Virus record (IMG/VR): IMGVR_UViG_3300021963_000023
Span: 124,001-188,000 of that record
Length of the DNA stretch: 64,000 nucleotides
Direction: 5' to 3' (one strand)
Shown here piece after piece: positions 5,536-53,268 of the stretch. The position numbers and the translations under genes were made by a program. Under the pieces are notes generated by a model. It saw nothing but the letters and a program-made list of their open reading frames with translations. It made no database searches and was not told the DNA's origin. Every line of letters begins with the position of its first letter. The stretch's first letter is position 1.

Positions 5536-6561
5536 ATGTCTAACACATTATTGGTTGATGGAGATAATTTATTAACCATAGGTTTCTACGGACAAAAGAA
5601 TAGATTTTATAAGGGTCAACATATTGGGGGTTTATTCCACTTTATTGACACCCTTAGAAGATCTTTCGAAACATATCAGTTAGACAAAATTTGTGTATTT
5701 TGGGATGGTAAAGAAGGCTCTCTATCTAGAAAGAAAATTTACCATCACTACAAAGAAAACAGAAAGCAAAGAAACAGAACGGAAGAGGAAATTAATTCAT
5801 ATCAATATCAAAGAAATAGAATTAAAAAATACCTAGAAGAATTATACGTTAGGCAAGCCGAATTTGAATACTGTGAATCTGATGATTGTATTGCTTTCTA
5901 TGCTCAAACTTCCCCAACAGAAAAGAAAATAGTTTATTCTTCTGATAGAGACCTCGTACAATTAATTAATGATGAGGTTATATTATACAATCCATCTCAT
6001 AGAAAGGTGTATTCTAAAAATGACATGATGCCTTATGATCATGAAGAAGTACTAATCGAAAACGTAAAGCTCATAAAAATATTATGTGGCGATCCATCTG
6101 ACAACATATTTGGTATTAAAAATTTGGGAATAAAAAGACTCATTAGCCTCTTTCCTGAAATTAAAACAAAACAGTTAACCTTACAAGAAGTAAGAAATCA
6201 AGGTAATTTAATATTTGAATCTGATAAAGAGAATAAATTAATTCAAAACTTCCTAACTGGTGTTACTAAACTAGGTGTTTTTGGAGATGAATTCTTTGAG
6301 ATAAATAATAAAATGGTTTGTCTAGATGATCCAATATTAACAGATGAAGCCAAAATAGGTATCATATCCTTGATTAAGGAGAATTTGGACTCAGAAGGTA
6401 GGTCATATAAGAACACCATGAAGATGATGATGGAAGATGGTTTATTCAGCATATTACCTAAAGCGGATGATTCTTGGATAAAATTCCTAAACCCATTTCT
6501 AAGGTTAACACAGATAGAAAAAAATAAAAAAAAAATAATAAAATTTAATATTAAAAAGTAA
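5536..6561 (+). CDS. 5'-3' exonuclease / flap endonuclease (T4 RNase H / Pol I N-terminal type)
   Basis: LLVDGDNL, VFWDG, YKENR, ESDDCIA, SSDRDLVQL, GDPSDNIFGI motifs. Confidence 0.9.
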   Translation: MSNTLLVDGDNLLTIGFYGQKNRFYKGQHIGGLFHFIDTLRRSFETYQLDKICVFWDGKEGSLSRKKIYHHYKENRKQRNRTEEEINSYQYQRNRIKKYLEELYVRQAEFEYCESDDCIAFYAQTSPTEKKIVYSSDRDLVQLINDEVILYNPSHRKVYSKNDMMPYDHEEVLIENVKLIKILCGDPSDNIFGIKNLGIKRLISLFPEIKTKQLTLQEVRNQGNLIFESDKENKLIQNFLTGVTKLGVFGDEFFEINNKMVCLDDPILTDEAKIGIISLIKENLDSEGRSYKNTMKMMMEDGLFSILPKADDSWIKFLNPFLRLTQIEKNKKKIIKFNIKK

Positions 6562-6566
6562 CATTT

Positions 6567-7016
6567 ATGAATAGTAACTTACAAGACCCAAACAAATTTG
6601 AGTTTTTACTAACATTAGACGGGAATATCATTTGTCAAAGATTTTTCAATGTCAGAGATTATAATCCAAGAACCAGAAGATCAATAAATTTACATGAAGA
6701 AGTAAAATTTATTTGTACGGAAATTTCAGACGATTTAAAAATAAAAAGTTCCGATTATTTGAGTGAAAATCAGGCATTTTTTATGAATAACGACATTGTG
6801 GAAGACCCCAAAGAATTGGATGAGCAGTATTTTTTGTTGCAAATTAAACAAGGCGACGAGGTATTTATTGAAAGAATATTCCCTGCCCATTACTATCACC
6901 CAAAGGTTAGATATGCGGTAGATATCAGACCAAAACTGAGGAAGATTTTGGGAGATTTAACTGAAGTTTTGTCACTTAGTGATCCTGAGACGACTTACCT
7001 TCAGTACAAGCTTTAA
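6567..7016 (+). CDS. Hypothetical protein (149 aa)
   Basis: ATG ORF packed between exonuclease and helicase. Confidence 0.75.
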   Translation: MNSNLQDPNKFEFLLTLDGNIICQRFFNVRDYNPRTRRSINLHEEVKFICTEISDDLKIKSSDYLSENQAFFMNNDIVEDPKELDEQYFLLQIKQGDEVFIERIFPAHYYHPKVRYAVDIRPKLRKILGDLTEVLSLSDPETTYLQYKL

Positions 7017-50111: not shown

Positions 50112-50924
50112 ATGAAAAAGTCTGCACCCATCGTTAAAACTGAAGAAATTCAGTACTACCTAAAGGATTTAAAGAGAATCCCTGTCATCTCTCACGAAAG
50201 AGAGTATGAAATTTTTAAAAGCTTAAAAGAAGACAAGGGTCTGAGTAAGACGGATCGACAGAAATTAATTGATGAGGTTATTACTGGTAACTTACGTTTT
50301 GTTATATCGGTGGCTAAAACATATCAGAATCAAGGATTAGATATTGGTGATTTAATATCTGAAGGTAATATTGGTTTAATAAAAGCAATTGAAAGATATG
50401 ATCTAACATCTGGATTTAAATTTATTTCATATGCGGTGTGGTGGATTAAACAACAGATATTATATTCATTAAATGAGTACTCAAGAACTATTAGAGTACC
50501 GTCTAATGTAATTCAAGATGCACAAAAAGCTAAAAAAATTGATGCTAAAGATGAGGACAAATATTTTATTGAATATTCTCAGGTTGCATTAACGGGTATC
50601 CCAACAACAATAGATTTATTCAGAGAAATAAATGAAGATGGTGACACATTAATAGAGATGATCGCCAACCCTAATTCTGAAATGCCAGATGCTATTGCGA
50701 ATAGTGCTGAAGATCTTAAGCATAGAATAAAGTATATGATGTCTTTTCTAGATGAAAGAGAACGGGCTATTATTGATGGTTATTTTGGACTACTTGGTAG
50801 TGAAAAAAATCTAGAAGATCTAGGTGAAGAGTTTGGTTGTACTAAAGAAAGAATTAGACAATTGAAGGATAAAGCAATAAAAAAACTTAGAAACGAGAGC
50901 TTTTCTCTCCTAAAATATTTATAA
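50112..50924 (+). CDS. RNA polymerase sigma factor, sigma-70 family (RpoD/RpoS-like)
   Basis: Region 1.2 (YYLKDL), region 2 NLRFVISVAK...GDLISEGNIGLIKAIERYD...FISYAVWWIKQ, region 4 LEDLGEEFGCTKERIRQL. Confidence 0.92.
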   Translation: MKKSAPIVKTEEIQYYLKDLKRIPVISHEREYEIFKSLKEDKGLSKTDRQKLIDEVITGNLRFVISVAKTYQNQGLDIGDLISEGNIGLIKAIERYDLTSGFKFISYAVWWIKQQILYSLNEYSRTIRVPSNVIQDAQKAKKIDAKDEDKYFIEYSQVALTGIPTTIDLFREINEDGDTLIEMIANPNSEMPDAIANSAEDLKHRIKYMMSFLDERERAIIDGYFGLLGSEKNLEDLGEEFGCTKERIRQLKDKAIKKLRNESFSLLKYL

Positions 50925-50935
50925 ACTAAACAAAC

Positions 50936-51238
50936 ATGGAAAACATTATTGAATTAATAAAAAAACATAAGATTAAACTATTAACACTTTTAGTTGTAAT
51001 CTTCTTTTTTAAATCTTGTGGAGGCTCTCGTGATCTTAAAAATTTAAACAATAAACATAAGATTGAATTGGATGAGATTAAAAAAAATAATGAGTTAGAG
51101 AAAAATAAAGCATATAAAGAGGGACAAATTAATGCGTTTGATGTTGTCATTGATGACGTTTCAAAAATTGATAGACCACCTGTGTTAATGAATTTACATA
51201 ATAAGTGGATCAGTGATAGAGACAAAGTAAAAAAATAG
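50936..51238 (+). CDS. Putative lipoprotein (o-spanin-like candidate)
   Basis: KKHKIKLLTLLVVIFFFKS|C lipobox-like signal; short helical body. Confidence 0.5.
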   Translation: MENIIELIKKHKIKLLTLLVVIFFFKSCGGSRDLKNLNNKHKIELDEIKKNNELEKNKAYKEGQINAFDVVIDDVSKIDRPPVLMNLHNKWISDRDKVKK

Positions 51239-51243
51239 ATTAA

Positions 51244-52452
51244 ATGAAACATTGGATAGAGAAAAATTATAAAACATTAATAATTGCCGCGTTTTTGGTT
51301 CCGATCATTACTGTGGCAATTGTTTCTATTTCACACGTTACCAAATGGTATGGTATATCTAATCCAGTTAGCTGGGCTTTATATTTGTCTATTGGTATTG
51401 AAATAGCTGCGCTATCAGCATTAGCTGCAATATCTGCGAACATGGGTAACAAGGTATACTTCCCATTTGCGGTTGTGACAATAGTACAATTTATAGGTAA
51501 TATCTATTTTGCTTATTCATATATTGATATCAACGGACAACCATTTAAAGATTGGGTTGGTTTAGTTTCACCTCTAGTTGAATTTATGGGTGTTGAGGCA
51601 AACGACTTTGTGGGTCATAAAAGATTTCTTGCGTTTTTTGCTGGTGGTATGTTACCAATTATTTCTTTATCATTCCTTCACATGTTGGTCAAATTTACAG
51701 AAGAGGATAGAATGAGAGGGCTCGAAAATGATATTGATAAAAAAATTCAAGACAATGTTCTATCTGCTGATGTTGAAGATGAAAACAGTAGACTTAAATT
51801 ATCACAAAGAGATTTGGAAATCTTAGAAAAACATTTAGCTAATCCTAACCCACCAAATGAAGCACTAAAACAAGCGGCAGAAAAACATAGTGAGTTGTTT
51901 AAAGATAAACAAAGAGATTTGTTAGCTGAGATGATGCAAAATGATCAAGAGCTTGGTTTATATGATGAACCATTTGACAATCCATTAATTAAAGAAGATA
52001 AAGAAGATGTTTCTGATTGGGATGTAACCTTAATGGATGGATTAGATGAAGACGAATCATTCTTTACTGATGAGGAGATTGAAAATATTTTACAACAACA
52101 ACCAACAGAAGAGGAAGTACAACAAAATTTTTCCACTATAACCCCTAAAATTGAAAATAATTTCCAGCAAGATTTTGTTCCTGGGTTATCTGATGAGGAG
52201 GTAATGGAAATGAATCAAGATGAGTACGAAAGAAAATTAGATACAGATGATGATTTTGATGGGTTTGTTCCTGAACCATTTGCCACACCAGAAGAAGTTG
52301 AAAAATTTAATTTAGACGAATCAATTAAAGAATATTTTGATGAGAAGGAAGAAGACCCGGCAATAGAAATAATTGATAATGAGATTTTATCAGATGAGCT
52401 TTATGAAGAGGTTGACGATTCTGATGAGGATGACCTAAAAAAAAAATCATAG
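51244..52452 (+). CDS. Four-TM membrane protein with long acidic C-terminal tail (holin-like candidate)
   Basis: 4 hydrophobic segments in first ~150 aa; D/E-rich tail; ends KKKS across an A10 run. Confidence 0.6.
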   Translation: MKHWIEKNYKTLIIAAFLVPIITVAIVSISHVTKWYGISNPVSWALYLSIGIEIAALSALAAISANMGNKVYFPFAVVTIVQFIGNIYFAYSYIDINGQPFKDWVGLVSPLVEFMGVEANDFVGHKRFLAFFAGGMLPIISLSFLHMLVKFTEEDRMRGLENDIDKKIQDNVLSADVEDENSRLKLSQRDLEILEKHLANPNPPNEALKQAAEKHSELFKDKQRDLLAEMMQNDQELGLYDEPFDNPLIKEDKEDVSDWDVTLMDGLDEDESFFTDEEIENILQQQPTEEEVQQNFSTITPKIENNFQQDFVPGLSDEEVMEMNQDEYERKLDTDDDFDGFVPEPFATPEEVEKFNLDESIKEYFDEKEEDPAIEIIDNEILSDELYEEVDDSDEDDLKKKS

Positions 52453-52685
52453 AGAGTCCTTTACCTACAGAAACACCTTTACCCACGGAAACATTAAACC
52501 CAACTAGTACACCAGAACCAACTAGTACAATGTTTCCAACTGATACACCAGTACCAACGCCAACATTAACGGAGACGCCAACTCCAACACCAACAAATTT
52601 TGTTGAAGACACACCAAGGATATTAATTGGTGGTTTTAAAACGATACAAAGAAATGTTAGAAATTCTAGACGCAGGAGCTTTTAA
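52434..52685 (+). CDS. Pro/Thr-rich -1-frame extension of 51244 gene (candidate frameshift product; not in ORF track)
   Basis: -1 frame opens right after TGA at 52431 and reads IIESPLPTETPLPTETLNPTSTPEPTSTMFPTDTPVPTPTLTETPTPTPTNFVED...RRRSF*; no start codon near its 5' end. Confidence 0.6.
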   Translation, partial: PKKKIIESPLPTETPLPTETLNPTSTPEPTSTMFPTDTPVPTPTLTETPTPTPTNFVEDTPRILIGGFKTIQRNVRNSRRRSF

Positions 52686-53268
52686 ACCCAAAACAAAAAA
52701 TAAGAAATATAAGAAATCACAAATCCTTTTATATGACACTAAAAGGAAATATGATGATTTTATTAAAATGTTAAAATATAGAAGAAATGGGAATTATGAT
52801 GACATCCCTCATTTTTGTGTTACAAAAAGTGGTAAGGTTTATAAAATATTGGACCCCGAATATTCTTCAACAACTTTTAACAATAATAATGTAGATCGAA
52901 AGCAAATTAAAATTGCGGTTGAAAATCTGGGGTGGTTAAATAAAAATACAATCACCGGGGTATATAACAACTGGATTAATGACCCATTTAGGGGCACGCC
53001 ACACGTTAGAGGATGGAGAGGATACTTCTATTGGGATTTGTACACAGAAGACCAATTAAACACCTTAGCTGAGCTTTGTTTTGTACTATGTGTTAAATAT
53101 AGTATTACCTATCGCTGCGTCCCATCGTCAGGATATATTGAAAACGCAAAAAACATTGATGGAATAGTCAGTAAATCAAATTTCTTTGATATTTATACAG
53201 ATATAAACCCTTCGTTTAATTTTAATATATTTGAAGAAAATGTCAAACAAGCAGAATCTAGGATATGA
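52654..53268 (+). CDS. N-acetylmuramoyl-L-alanine amidase (Amidase_2/PGRP-fold), degenerate Zn ligands
   Basis: IPHFCVTKSGKVY, IAVEN, LYTEDQLNTLAELCFVLC helix, D.NP; first His motif replaced by LLYDT. Confidence 0.6.
   Translation: MLEILDAGAFKPKTKNKKYKKSQILLYDTKRKYDDFIKMLKYRRNGNYDDIPHFCVTKSGKVYKILDPEYSSTTFNNNNVDRKQIKIAVENLGWLNKNTITGVYNNWINDPFRGTPHVRGWRGYFYWDLYTEDQLNTLAELCFVLCVKYSITYRCVPSSGYIENAKNIDGIVSKSNFFDIYTDINPSFNFNIFEENVKQAESRI

What the first reader, a model, noticed from the sequence alone, without database searches (positions are those of the whole stretch)
52431..52685. Candidate programmed -1 frameshift or transcriptional slippage on an A10 run, adding a Pro/Thr tail to a 4-TM lysis-cluster protein
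Seen: the 51244 ORF ends ...GAC CTA AAA AAA AAA TCA TAG across A10 (52437-52446), which contains the slippery heptamer A AAA AAA. The -1 frame is closed by TGA immediately before the run (52431) and then reads ~80 codons of clearly protein-like sequence (IIESPLPTETPLPTETLNPTSTPEPTS...TPTPTPTNFVED...RRRSF, stop 52683-52685). It has no start codon near its 5' end, and it fills the otherwise empty gap up to the amidase gene. Established: phages use -1 shifts to make two isoforms (tail chaperone G/GT), and A9+ runs cause polymerase slippage. Inference: 402-aa and ~480-aa isoforms of a holin-like protein are made, which would be an unusual setting for recoding.
Basis: partly seen in the sequence, partly recalled or inferred. 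Interest (0 to 1): 0.72.

Follow-up and report, generated by a model that had tools for sequence, protein, structure and literature searches.

The report
Conserved A10 recoding site, phage membrane protein
A run of ten A's at the end of a membrane-protein gene, next to the cell-wall-cutting enzyme of an uncultivated aquatic jumbo phage, is kept letter for letter across a large phage clade; it almost certainly lets the phage make a short (402 aa) and a long (480 aa) version of the protein from one gene.

Summary
ORF 51244-52452 (402 aa) ends CTA AAA AAA AAA TCA TAG across an A10 run (52437-52446). The -1 frame is closed by TGA at 52431 and then open to 52685. Three independent metagenome assemblies give A10 with no indel, so it is not an assembly error.

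The comparative evidence is strong:
- About 47 distinct lineages of related jumbo phages keep an A9-A11 run at this junction. None of 135 Lys codons in the run is AAG, against 19% elsewhere in these genes.
- In 41 distinct contexts the tail lies in the -1 frame, and the 0-frame stop comes 0-12 nt after the run.
- The tail evolves as a protein: changes at codon positions 1/2/3 number 11/8/113 in the window's group.
- 28 of 39 tails have no ATG, and 6 have no start codon of any kind.
- Six lineages have the tail in frame and still keep the run.

No downstream RNA structure exists. A hairpin abuts the 5' edge of the run (window z = -2.4; enriched across the family). Best explanation: programmed recoding, mainly RNA-polymerase slippage adding one A, as in Citrobacter tssM1 and Thermus dnaX; ribosomal -1 slippage is not excluded. 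No RNA or protein data could be obtained.

The "holin" label rests only on the conserved adjacency to an Amidase_2 gene; the 4-TM domain has a DUF2637-like fold. This is a new member of a known kind.

The parts
51244..52452 (+). Frame-0 ORF, 402 aa: the short isoform. It has an N-terminal 4-TM domain, a variable acidic region, and ends ...DDLKKKS.
   Evidence: More than 4,485 relatives, and nearly all end KKK/KKN plus 0-2 residues.
51244..51723 (+). Conserved N-terminal membrane domain: four long helices plus one short helix. The fold is DUF2637-like.
   Evidence: Almost invariant in close relatives. The family has 582 clusters at 50% identity. AlphaFold2 pLDDT 92.5. Best AFDB matches are DUF2637, TM-score 0.5-0.62. 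No Pfam, PHROG or PDB match.
52409..52436 (+). RNA hairpin whose 3' arm ends at the base before the A-run.
   Evidence: strand folding: -6.8 kcal/mol, z -2.43. Equivalent hairpins with different arm sequences occur in most -1 lineages. They are more stable than at other positions of the same genes and more stable than synonymous recodings.
52431..52433 (+). TGA that closes the -1 frame just upstream of the run.
   Evidence: In relatives the -1 frame is closed mostly 2-9 codons (up to 26) before the run.
52437..52446 (+). A10 slippery run: the recoding site.
   Evidence: A10 with no indel in three assemblies. A10 (37) or A11 (8) in 45 distinct contexts, with 0 of 135 Lys codons AAG. The run is kept in the in-frame lineages too.
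52450..52452 (+). Frame-0 stop TAG, 3 nt after the run.
   Evidence: In relatives the frame-0 stop lies 0-12 nt after the run.
52446..52685 (+). -1-frame tail: 79 codons after the run plus the stop. It is Pro/Thr-rich and ends RNVRNSRRRSF. Joined to the ORF it gives the 480-aa long isoform.
   Evidence: 43 distinct homologous tails. Third-position bias 11/8/113, synonymous:non-synonymous 107:25, in the window's group. No conserved start codon.
52654..53268 (+). N-acetylmuramoyl-L-alanine amidase (Amidase_2) gene. Its first 32 nt overlap the end of the tail.
   Evidence: Pfam. Conserved start 'MLEI...' lying inside the tail's R-N-V codons. It is the next gene in 81 of 83 loci.
50112..50924 (+). 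Phage sigma-70 family factor, conserved two genes upstream (context only).
   Evidence: Pfam. Synteny. No RNA polymerase gene was found in the 251 kb record.

Best explanation
The A10 run is a programmed recoding site that gives two C-terminal isoforms of one membrane protein.

Standard decoding gives the 402-aa form, which stops 3 nt after the run. A fraction of the RNA polymerases slip on the ten rA:dT pairs and add one A (or drop two). Ordinary translation of those mRNAs then continues into the -1 frame and gives a 480-aa form. This long form carries a Pro/Thr linker and a basic end (...RNVRNSRRRSF). A nascent-RNA hairpin that ends exactly at the first A probably helps the slip, in the manner of a terminator hairpin. 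The polymerase is probably the host's multisubunit enzyme, directed by a phage sigma factor.

Ribosomes translating the long form run across the start codon of the amidase gene, so slippage may also tune endolysin translation.

Shown here: the sequence layout, its reproducibility, nucleotide-level conservation of the run, protein-level selection on the tail, absence of an independent start, and absence of a downstream frameshift stimulator.

Inferred: that RNA polymerase rather than the ribosome does the slipping, the proportion of long form, and any role in lysis timing.
For: (1) The run length is real. Three independent assemblies give A10 with 0 gaps. A co-occurring strain has A11 by substitution, with the same frame layout.
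(2) The run is A10 or A11 in 45 distinct contexts across a clade with 100/100 support and long branches. None of 135 Lys codons in the run is AAG, against 19% elsewhere in these genes.
(3) The frame relation is fixed. In 41 contexts the tail is at -1, the frame-0 stop lies 0-12 nt after the run, and the -1 frame is closed just upstream.
(4) The tail is a protein under selection: changes at codon positions 1/2/3 total 708/557/2235, and the other two frames show the reverse pattern. It has shared motifs.
(5) There is no independent initiation. 28 of 39 tails lack any ATG before the amidase overlap, and 6 lack ATG, GTG and TTG altogether.
(6) The run is always 9 nt or more, longer than the 7 nt a ribosomal slip needs, and it occurs in two different codon phases. 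That length matches the 9-10 bp RNA:DNA hybrid (PMC5009743).
(7) There is no downstream structure: mean z -0.33, and the window's 70 nt fold at -1.3 kcal/mol. The genome does not use Shine-Dalgarno sites.
(8) A hairpin abuts the run, the geometry described for stem-loop-stimulated slippage (Penno 2015, as cited in PMC5009743).
(9) Six in-frame lineages keep the run. In three of them both other frames stop within 0-4 codons. This parallels Thermus dnaX and Yersinia tssM3.
(10) A direct precedent exists. In C. rodentium tssM1, A11 before the stop gives 20-25% long form by RNAP slippage.
Against: There is no RNA-level or protein-level evidence. The one RNA run laid on the region had no contig across the run, and only assembled contigs, not raw reads, were available.

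A_AAA_AAA is also a good ribosomal -1 slip site, and poly(A) lets ribosomes slide (PMC4363877), so the ribosome could contribute or even dominate.

The hairpin evidence is statistical. The window's p against synonymous recodings is only 0.066, the lineages are not independent, and RNAalifold found no column-wise consensus.

E. coli RNAP is reported to slip less readily on A runs than on T runs (abstract of PMC6260861), and the slippage behaviour of a Bacteroidota RNAP is unknown.

The terminal motif of the tail is dual-coding with the amidase N-terminus, so that part of its conservation is ambiguous.
Confidence: 0.6

Rival explanations
1. The same two isoforms are made, but by the ribosome: -1 programmed frameshifting on A_AAA_AAA, or sliding on the poly(A) tract, on mRNA that is uniformly A10.
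For: The heptamer A_AAA_AAA is present in a usable phase in both codon phases seen. Ribosomes slide on iterated AAA codons in E. coli (PMC4363877, listed). A nearby frame-0 stop is typical of frameshift cassettes. All comparative evidence for two isoforms fits this mechanism equally well.
Against: There is no downstream stem-loop or pseudoknot in any consistent form. An upstream SD-like stimulator is not possible, because the genome does not use SD sites. Seven A's would suffice, yet no lineage has fewer than nine. The conserved structure lies upstream and abuts the run, where it can act on the polymerase but not on the ribosome's mRNA entry channel.
Confidence: 0.22
2. DNA-level phase variation. 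Replication slippage switches the gene between A10 (short form only) and A11 (fused long form) in different virions. The tail is kept by selection on the minority 'ON' genomes, with no recoding during expression.
For: Length variants exist in assemblies: L083 has A11 where L004 has A10, giving an in-frame fusion; L084 has A12, also fused; L085 has A9. Homopolymers of this length are known hot spots for replication slippage.
Against: Such variants are rare: 3 of the 120 best protein clusters, none in three metagenomes, and none among 77 viral contigs. Contingency loci normally show broad length polymorphism with both states common, whereas here the run is held at 10-11 with one frame relation over a deep tree. 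The stable in-frame lineages restored the frame outside the run and kept it at A9-A10.
Confidence: 0.08
3. Nothing functional: a sequencing or assembly indel in a single fused gene, a decaying pseudogene tail, or an independent small gene starting at ATG 52530.
For: Homopolymers are error-prone in sequencing. There is an ATG at 52530. No expression data exist.
Against: A10 is reproduced in three assemblies and in dozens of independently assembled relatives. The tail shows a strong excess of synonymous changes and stays open for 51-152 codons in nearly all lineages. ATG 52530 is absent from L021, and 28 of 39 tails have no ATG.
Confidence: 0.03

Closest known systems
Citrobacter rodentium tssM1 / Yersinia pseudotuberculosis tssM3 transcriptional frameshifting (PMC4256274)
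   Same: Both concern an inner-membrane protein gene with a poly-A run (A11) a few bases before a premature stop. RNAP adds A's, giving a short and a long C-terminal variant (20-25% long), and both forms and their ratio matter. A homologue has the in-frame layout, in which slippage gives the short form. The family here shows the same out-of-frame/in-frame split.
   Different: In tssM the poly-A is rare among homologues: only two genes were found to have it. Here the run is kept across a whole clade, with hundreds of 50%-identity clusters in the wider family. The setting here is a phage gene next to an endolysin, not a secretion system. No experiments exist here. A hairpin abuts the run here.
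Thermus thermophilus dnaX (tau/gamma by transcriptional slippage; reviewed in PMC5009743)
   Same: Slippage on an A run. Stops lie close by in both non-zero frames, so that every slipped transcript gives the short product. This is the layout seen in the in-frame lineages L014, L039 and L042.
   Different: In the window itself the layout is the reverse: slippage is needed for the long product.
Shigella flexneri spa13 transcriptional slippage (reviewed in PMC5009743)
   Same: Slippage gives 25-30% of a product with a 112-aa C-terminal extension. The end of the extension overlaps the start of the next gene (spa32), and slippage affects that gene's expression. Here the 79-aa extension overlaps the amidase start by 32 nt.
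   Different: An effect on expression of the downstream amidase is only a hypothesis here.
Stem-loop-stimulated transcriptional slippage in a Roseiflexus IS element (Penno et al. 2015, as described in PMC5009743)
   Same: A nascent-RNA hairpin lies immediately 5' of the slippery motif, with terminator-like geometry.
   Different: That motif is T5C5 and yields a specific one-base deletion, with a strong GC hairpin. Here the motif is a long A run, the hairpins are modest (-4 to -9 kcal/mol), and the productive change is a one-base insertion. I could not read the primary paper, because it is not held.
Phage tail-assembly chaperone G/GT -1 frameshift and the lambda S105/S107 holin/antiholin dual start
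   Same: These are phage genes that make two products sharing one end in a set ratio. S105/S107 is the classic way of making two isoforms of a lysis membrane protein.
   Different: G/GT uses ribosomal slippage on a heptamer. S105/S107 differ at the N-terminus through two start codons. Neither uses a long homopolymer. My literature searches found no described recoding site in a holin or other lysis-cassette membrane protein.

Membership tests
Programmed transcriptional slippage sites (poly-A/T run; tssM1, dnaX of Thermus, spa13) | A homopolymeric A or T run of about 9 or more inside a coding sequence | tested here: met
   A10 at 52437-52446; A9-A11 in all long-form relatives.
Programmed transcriptional slippage sites (poly-A/T run; tssM1, dnaX of Thermus, spa13) | An alternative-frame extension that is conserved as protein and cannot be translated on its own | tested here: met
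   Codon-position bias 708/557/2235; 28 of 39 tails lack an ATG and 6 lack any start codon.
Programmed transcriptional slippage sites (poly-A/T run; tssM1, dnaX of Thermus, spa13) | The run is conserved at nucleotide level beyond what the protein requires | tested here: met
   0 of 135 Lys codons in the run are AAG, against 19% elsewhere. The flanking partial codons also contribute A's. The run persisted over a deep tree.
Programmed transcriptional slippage sites (poly-A/T run; tssM1, dnaX of Thermus, spa13) | mRNA population heterogeneous in run length while the DNA is homogeneous | not testable with these tools
   The only read-laying run gave assembled contigs. The RNA run X17 had no contig across 51438-52658. 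The DNA side is homogeneous in three runs.
Programmed transcriptional slippage sites (poly-A/T run; tssM1, dnaX of Thermus, spa13) | Two protein products detected, with a junction peptide | not testable with these tools
   No proteomic data are available.
Canonical -1 programmed ribosomal frameshift cassette | Slippery heptamer X_XXY_YYZ in the correct phase | tested here: met
   A_AAA_AAA in frame 0 (CTA AAA AAA). It is also usable in the phase-2 relatives.
Canonical -1 programmed ribosomal frameshift cassette | Stimulatory stem-loop or pseudoknot 5-9 nt downstream, or an SD-like element upstream | tested here: not met
   Downstream 70 nt: mean z -0.33 over 45 contexts; window MFE -1.3 kcal/mol, z +1.39. 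SD-like motifs are not used in this genome.
Stem-loop-stimulated transcriptional slippage (Penno 2015 type) | A nascent-RNA hairpin directly 5' of the slippery motif | tested here: met
   Window hairpin 52409-52436: -6.8 kcal/mol, z -2.43, gap 0. Family: mean -4.9 against -1.8 kcal/mol at control positions, and 61% of contexts in the best decile. Against synonymous recodings the mean is -2.3 kcal/mol. The lineages are not independent, so this is a family-level tendency.
Stem-loop-stimulated transcriptional slippage (Penno 2015 type) | Slippage efficiency depends on the hairpin | not testable with these tools
   This needs a reporter assay with hairpin-disrupting and compensatory mutations.
Holins | Gene adjacent to the endolysin gene; a membrane protein with a charged cytoplasmic C-terminus | tested here: met
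   The amidase is the next gene in 81 of 83 loci. Helical membrane domain. Charged C-terminal region. At 402-480 aa it is much larger than typical holins.
Holins | Sequence or fold membership in a described holin family | tested here: not met
   No holin family in Pfam or PHROGs at meaningful E-values. No PDB match. The nearest folds are DUF2637.
Holins | Timed, lethal membrane permeabilisation that releases the endolysin | not testable with these tools
   This needs expression and lysis assays.
DUF2637 (PF10935) membrane domain | Match to the family profile, or a clearly shared fold | tested here: inconclusive
   Foldseek against AFDB clusters: several DUF2637 proteins with TM by query 0.51-0.62 and rmsd 3.4-5.6 A, but E-values of 0.08-0.3. 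No member of the 78-sequence alignment hits PF10935.
Phase-variable (contingency) homopolymer locus | Frequent run-length polymorphism among close strains, with ON and OFF states both common | tested here: not met
   No indel in three metagenomes. 3 length variants among 120 protein clusters. Run length 10-11 in 45 contexts. Rare variants cannot be excluded, because only contigs were available.

The most novel reading that the evidence does not exclude
The recoding site is a lysis-timing or dosage device specific to a large clade of aquatic jumbo phages that infect Bacteroidota. RNA-polymerase slippage is tuned by the hairpin and by whether the tail lies out of frame or in frame. It sets the ratio of a short and a long form of the membrane protein that gates the endolysin (a holin/antiholin-like pair differing at the C-terminus). 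Because only long-form ribosomes cross the amidase start codon, it also couples endolysin translation to that ratio. That would be the first holin-type regulator made by transcriptional recoding, and the first case in which slippage links two lysis genes.
Probability: 0.15. Interest if true: 0.85.

Novelty: new member of a known kind. Interest (0 to 1): 0.62.

Why it matters
Slippage on poly-A runs to make two length variants is known from a handful of bacterial genes, usually as isolated cases. Here the same device is fixed across a deep and very abundant clade of uncultivated freshwater and marine jumbo phages: more than 4,400 relatives at 90% clustering, and 582 clusters at 50% for the membrane domain.

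That has three consequences:
- **Annotation.** Gene callers will systematically truncate this protein and leave a 200-nt 'empty' gap before the endolysin gene.
- **A natural experiment for the recoding field.** The family offers dozens of independent sequence contexts, out-of-frame and in-frame layouts, one or two runs per gene, and hairpins of different strength, all of which can be put straight into reporters.
- **An untested regulatory idea.** It places a recoding event in a phage gene next to the endolysin gene, where isoform ratios are the classic way of setting lysis time.

It also concerns hosts (Bacteroidota) whose transcription and translation signals differ from those of E. coli, and for which I found no recoding data in the papers searched.

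Tried and rejected
- **Megablast against GenBank phages:** no match. A tblastn search found only one uncultured 462 kb phage at 31% identity, so no cultured relative or host could be named.
- **Pfam and PHROGs on the 4-TM protein and the tail:** nothing meaningful. A TacA1 hit of 20.6 bits lies just under its cut-off, on a short conserved helix.
- **PDB fold search:** nothing.
- **RNAalifold on an ungapped alignment of the 30 nt before the run:** no consensus pairs, because arm positions and loop sizes differ. I replaced it with energy-based controls.
- **Off-frame open-length test over all ORFs of the genome:** uninformative, because neighbouring genes often overlap stops in another frame.
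- **The other A10 at an ORF 3' end (window 6526-6535):** there is no room for an alternative frame, so it is not a second site.
- **Outer-membrane spanin (Rz1-like, Pro-rich, embedded gene) as an explanation for the tail:** rejected. The tail has no Cys or lipobox and usually no start codon.
- **Another genetic code:** not indicated. The frame-0 stops after the run are a mix of TAG and TAA, and ORFs read normally under table 11.
- **Tail truncations ending '...DDKK(S)' (L047, L063, L067, L072) as a possible second slippery run:** these are simple shortenings with only six A's, followed directly by the amidase gene.
- **RNA evidence:** RNA run X17 has no contig over the run. The accession of the A11 contig (ERR3687836) is not mentioned in any held paper, so I cannot say whether it is RNA or DNA.
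- **Primary paper on hairpin-stimulated slippage (PMC4413344):** not held. I relied on the review instead.
- **Complex prediction (tail against amidase):** not run, because gene adjacency alone is not sufficient reason.
Full report
**1. The observation**

ORF 51244-52452 encodes 402 aa and ends GAC CTA AAA AAA AAA TCA TAG. The A10 run occupies 52437-52446. The -1 frame has TGA at 52431-52433 and is then open for 83 codons to the stop at 52683-52685. It reads PKKKIIESPLPTETPLPTET...TPTPTPTNFVEDTPRILIGGFKTIQRNVRNSRRRSF.

An Amidase_2 gene follows (Pfam E 1.3e-6). Its true start is ATG 52654, because the N-terminus 'MLEI...' is conserved in relatives. The tail therefore overlaps the amidase gene by 32 nt, and without recoding about 200 nt before the amidase gene would be untranslated.

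The window is part of a 251 kb virus record estimated 75% complete, with 32% G+C.

**2. It is not an assembly artefact**

Twenty public runs hold near-identical sequence. Contigs of three independent DNA metagenomes cross the run with no gap and no listed insertion or deletion (X1 record 4, X2 record 17, X3 record 26).

A second strain in X1 differs at 52435, 52436, 52448 and 52456. That turns the site into GAC GAA AAA AAA AAA TAA: an A11 run made by substitution, with the same length and the same frame layout. This is exactly the context of locus L003.

**3. Chance**

One A10 in a genome of this composition is not remarkable. There are three A10 and one T10, against 5.6 and 1.9 expected, and most lie between genes. 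The only other A10 at an ORF 3' end (window 6526) has no alternative frame behind it. The case therefore rests on comparison with relatives.

**4. Relatives**

The protein has more than 4,485 relatives in metagenomes. Its first ~155 residues are almost invariant among close relatives, while the acidic remainder is variable. Nearly all relatives end ...KKKS...KKKF...EKKK...EKKN or ...LKKNF directly before the stop.

I fetched 80 viral contigs and analysed the DNA. Among 45 distinct sequence contexts:
- The run is A10 in 37 and A11 in 8. The A11 runs arise by substitution and leave the length unchanged.
- The run starts in codon phase 2 (35 contexts) or phase 3 (10 contexts).
- In 41 contexts the frame-0 stop lies 0-12 nt after the run.
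- In those contexts the -1 frame is closed a few codons upstream and open for 51-152 codons downstream in nearly all lineages. One lineage has a shortened tail of 34-35 codons.
- The +1 frame is mostly open for only about 20-40 codons.
- None of the 135 Lys codons inside the runs is AAG, although AAG makes up 19% of Lys codons elsewhere in the same genes.

A maximum-likelihood tree of four neighbouring conserved proteins puts all run-bearing genes in one clade (support 100/100). A sister clade of short-form genes (230-306 aa) lacks the run. The wider family of the membrane domain has 582 clusters at 50% identity, and the KKK/KKN ending reaches down to about 41% identity.

**5. The tail is a protein, and it is not a separate gene**

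There are 43 distinct tails. Most share an internal block (LYWEkDDxNPNQvIYDLENNktIIPtSEEE) and a basic end (RNVGNTQRRRFR and variants). The window's lineage has a Pro/Thr-rich linker in place of the internal block.

The last ~11 codons are dual-coding with the conserved amidase N-terminus, so I excluded them from the selection test. In the remainder, single-difference codons fall at positions 1/2/3 as 708/557/2235. For the window's own group the counts are 11/8/113, with 107 synonymous against 25 non-synonymous changes. Reading the same columns in either other frame reverses the ratio.

28 of 39 distinct -1 tails contain no ATG before the overlap, and six contain no ATG, GTG or TTG at all. One of these is L021, a close relative of the window (77% identity). 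The window's ATG 52530 is not conserved. The tail can therefore only be reached from the upstream ORF.

**6. In-frame lineages**

Six lineages have the tail in frame 0: L014/L015, L039/L043, L042, L088, L089 and L090. Yet all keep an A9-A10 run at the junction.

On the tree, the three of these lineages that it includes lie at separate places, each nested among -1 neighbours. The frame was restored by a change next to the run, not inside it.

In L014, and at the first runs of L039 and L042, both alternative frames stop within 0-4 codons of the run. Any slipped transcript there would give a short form ending just after KKK. So both layouts can yield the same pair of products, presumably in inverse proportions.

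Rare length variants also exist in single contigs:
- L083: A11, fused in frame.
- L084: A12, fused in frame.
- L085: A9, reading into a junk +1 frame.

**7. Mechanism**

- **No downstream structure.** The 70 nt after the run show no conserved structure (mean z -0.33). In the window they are essentially unstructured (-1.3 kcal/mol).
- **No Shine-Dalgarno sites.** Only 4% of ORFs have an SD-like 4-mer upstream, below the 9.7% background, and positions -13 to -10 are A-rich. To my knowledge that is typical of Bacteroidota-type initiation. It fits the predicted Flavobacteriia hosts of a recently described aquatic jumbo-phage lineage (PMC12619734), though I did not test whether this genome belongs to that lineage. 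The two usual stimulators of bacterial -1 ribosomal frameshifting are therefore both missing.
- **An upstream hairpin.** A hairpin ends at, or within 3 nt of, the first A in most -1 lineages. It is built from different arm sequences: CATCATC/GATGATG, CTTCC/GGAAG, CTTCGTCA/TGACGAAG, CTTTATCTG/CAGATGAAG.
  - Its mean energy is -4.9 kcal/mol, against -1.8 at other positions of the same genes. 61% of contexts fall in the best decile.
  - For synonymous recodings of the same ten codons the mean is -2.3 kcal/mol (Wilcoxon 1e-9, but the lineages are not independent).
  - In the window the hairpin spans 52409-52436: -6.8 kcal/mol, z -2.43.
  - Four of the five in-frame contexts I examined lack such a hairpin.
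- **Geometry and polymerase.** A hairpin directly 5' of a homopolymer as long as the RNA:DNA hybrid is the geometry described for stem-loop-stimulated RNA-polymerase slippage (review PMC5009743). No RNA polymerase gene was found in the record, but a sigma factor sits two genes upstream. A host-type multisubunit polymerase is therefore the likely enzyme; this is inference.
- **Run length.** The run never falls below nine, although seven A's would do for the ribosome.

Together these points favour transcriptional slippage. Editing the window sequence gives 402 aa for A10, 480 aa for A11 or A8, and 420-421 aa with a junk end for A9 or A12. Ribosomal slippage or sliding on poly(A) (PMC4363877) cannot be excluded and may contribute.

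**8. Precedents**

- *Citrobacter rodentium* tssM1: an inner-membrane protein whose stop is preceded by A11. RNAP slippage yields 20-25% full-length protein, and both forms and their ratio are needed. *Yersinia* tssM3 has the in-frame layout, where slippage makes the short form (PMC4256274).
- *Thermus* dnaX uses slippage with stops in both other frames.
- *Shigella* spa13 slippage adds a 112-aa extension whose end overlaps the start of the next gene and affects its expression. This parallels the tail/amidase overlap here, although the effect on the amidase is only a hypothesis.
- I found no paper describing recoding in a holin or other lysis-cassette membrane protein. The aquatic jumbo-phage paper does not mention frameshifting.

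**9. What the protein is**

The gene order sigma factor, small ORF, 4-TM gene, amidase, orf165, orf79 is conserved in all 83 loci examined. The pairing with the amidase gene is therefore ancient.

The N-terminal domain folds with high confidence (pLDDT 92.5) into four long helices plus one short helix. The best structural matches are DUF2637 membrane domains (TM-score 0.51-0.62) with weak E-values. Nothing in the PDB matches, and no sequence-level family does, holins included.

The positive-inside rule applied to the model suggests that both N- and C-termini are cytoplasmic, which would put the acidic region and the tail in the cytoplasm; this is inference. 'Candidate holin or lysis regulator' is a reasonable guess from context, because the amidase has no signal peptide or TM segment that I could see. 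It is not established.

**10. Verdict**

The interpretation, two isoforms by recoding at the A-run, is strongly supported by comparative evidence, and transcriptional slippage is the more likely mechanism. It is a new, unusually widespread member of a known kind of recoding. Direct RNA and protein evidence is still missing.

Noticed in passing
window 6526-6535: A second A10 run lies in the last codons (...IEKNKKKIIKFNIKK*) of a 341-aa ORF (5536-6561) between replication-type genes. The next gene starts at 6567, so there is no alternative-frame extension. It does not look like a recoding site.
   Followed up: yes
window 52627-52685: The mechanical ORF list starts the amidase at TTG 52627. Relatives show that the conserved start is ATG 52654 ('MLEI...'), which lies inside the tail's R-N-V codons. 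The last 32 nt of the tail are dual-coding, and both frames are conserved there.
   Followed up: yes
whole genome G000 (window = C1:124001-188000): Genes lack Shine-Dalgarno motifs (4% against a 9.7% background) and have A-rich positions -13 to -10. I recall this as Bacteroidota-type initiation. No RNA polymerase gene was found, but there is one clear sigma-70 factor (50112-50924) and one weak second match. The genome may belong to, or be near, the 'moraphage' lineage of aquatic jumbo phages (PMC12619734); I did not test this.
   Followed up: partly
L039/L043 (gene nt 767 and 1046) and L042 (gene nt 794 and 1353): These in-frame relatives carry two A10 runs in the same gene, bracketing the Pro/Thr-rich or middle segment. 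That could allow three or more isoforms. The second runs do not have immediate stops in the other frames.
   Followed up: partly
window 51778-51891 (residues 179-216 of the 402-aa protein): A conserved helical motif (SRLKLSxxDLEILEKHLxNPxPPNEALKxAAE) scores just under the Pfam cut-off for the antitoxin family TacA1 (20.6 against 21 bits). Many relatives have this hit precomputed. It may be a real small domain in the cytoplasmic region, or a chance match.
   Followed up: no
window 50936-51238: The 100-aa ORF between the sigma factor and the 4-TM gene has an N-terminal hydrophobic segment ending ...FFFKSCGG (a possible lipoprotein-like signal), followed by a coiled-coil-like region. Its position is conserved but its sequence diverges fast: tblastn detects it in only 17 of 83 loci. 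It could be another envelope or lysis component.
   Followed up: no
window 52320-52399 (run X1): A co-occurring strain replaces 78 nt of the acidic region with 30 other nt, a net change of 48 nt that keeps frame 0. The acidic region tolerates in-frame indels, in contrast with the invariant run a few codons downstream.
   Followed up: partly
L047, L063, L067, L072 (tails of 34-35 codons): One lineage has lost most of the tail, including the basic end. The shortened tail stops at ...DDKK(S), directly before the amidase start, yet the A11 run and the -1 layout are retained.
   Followed up: partly
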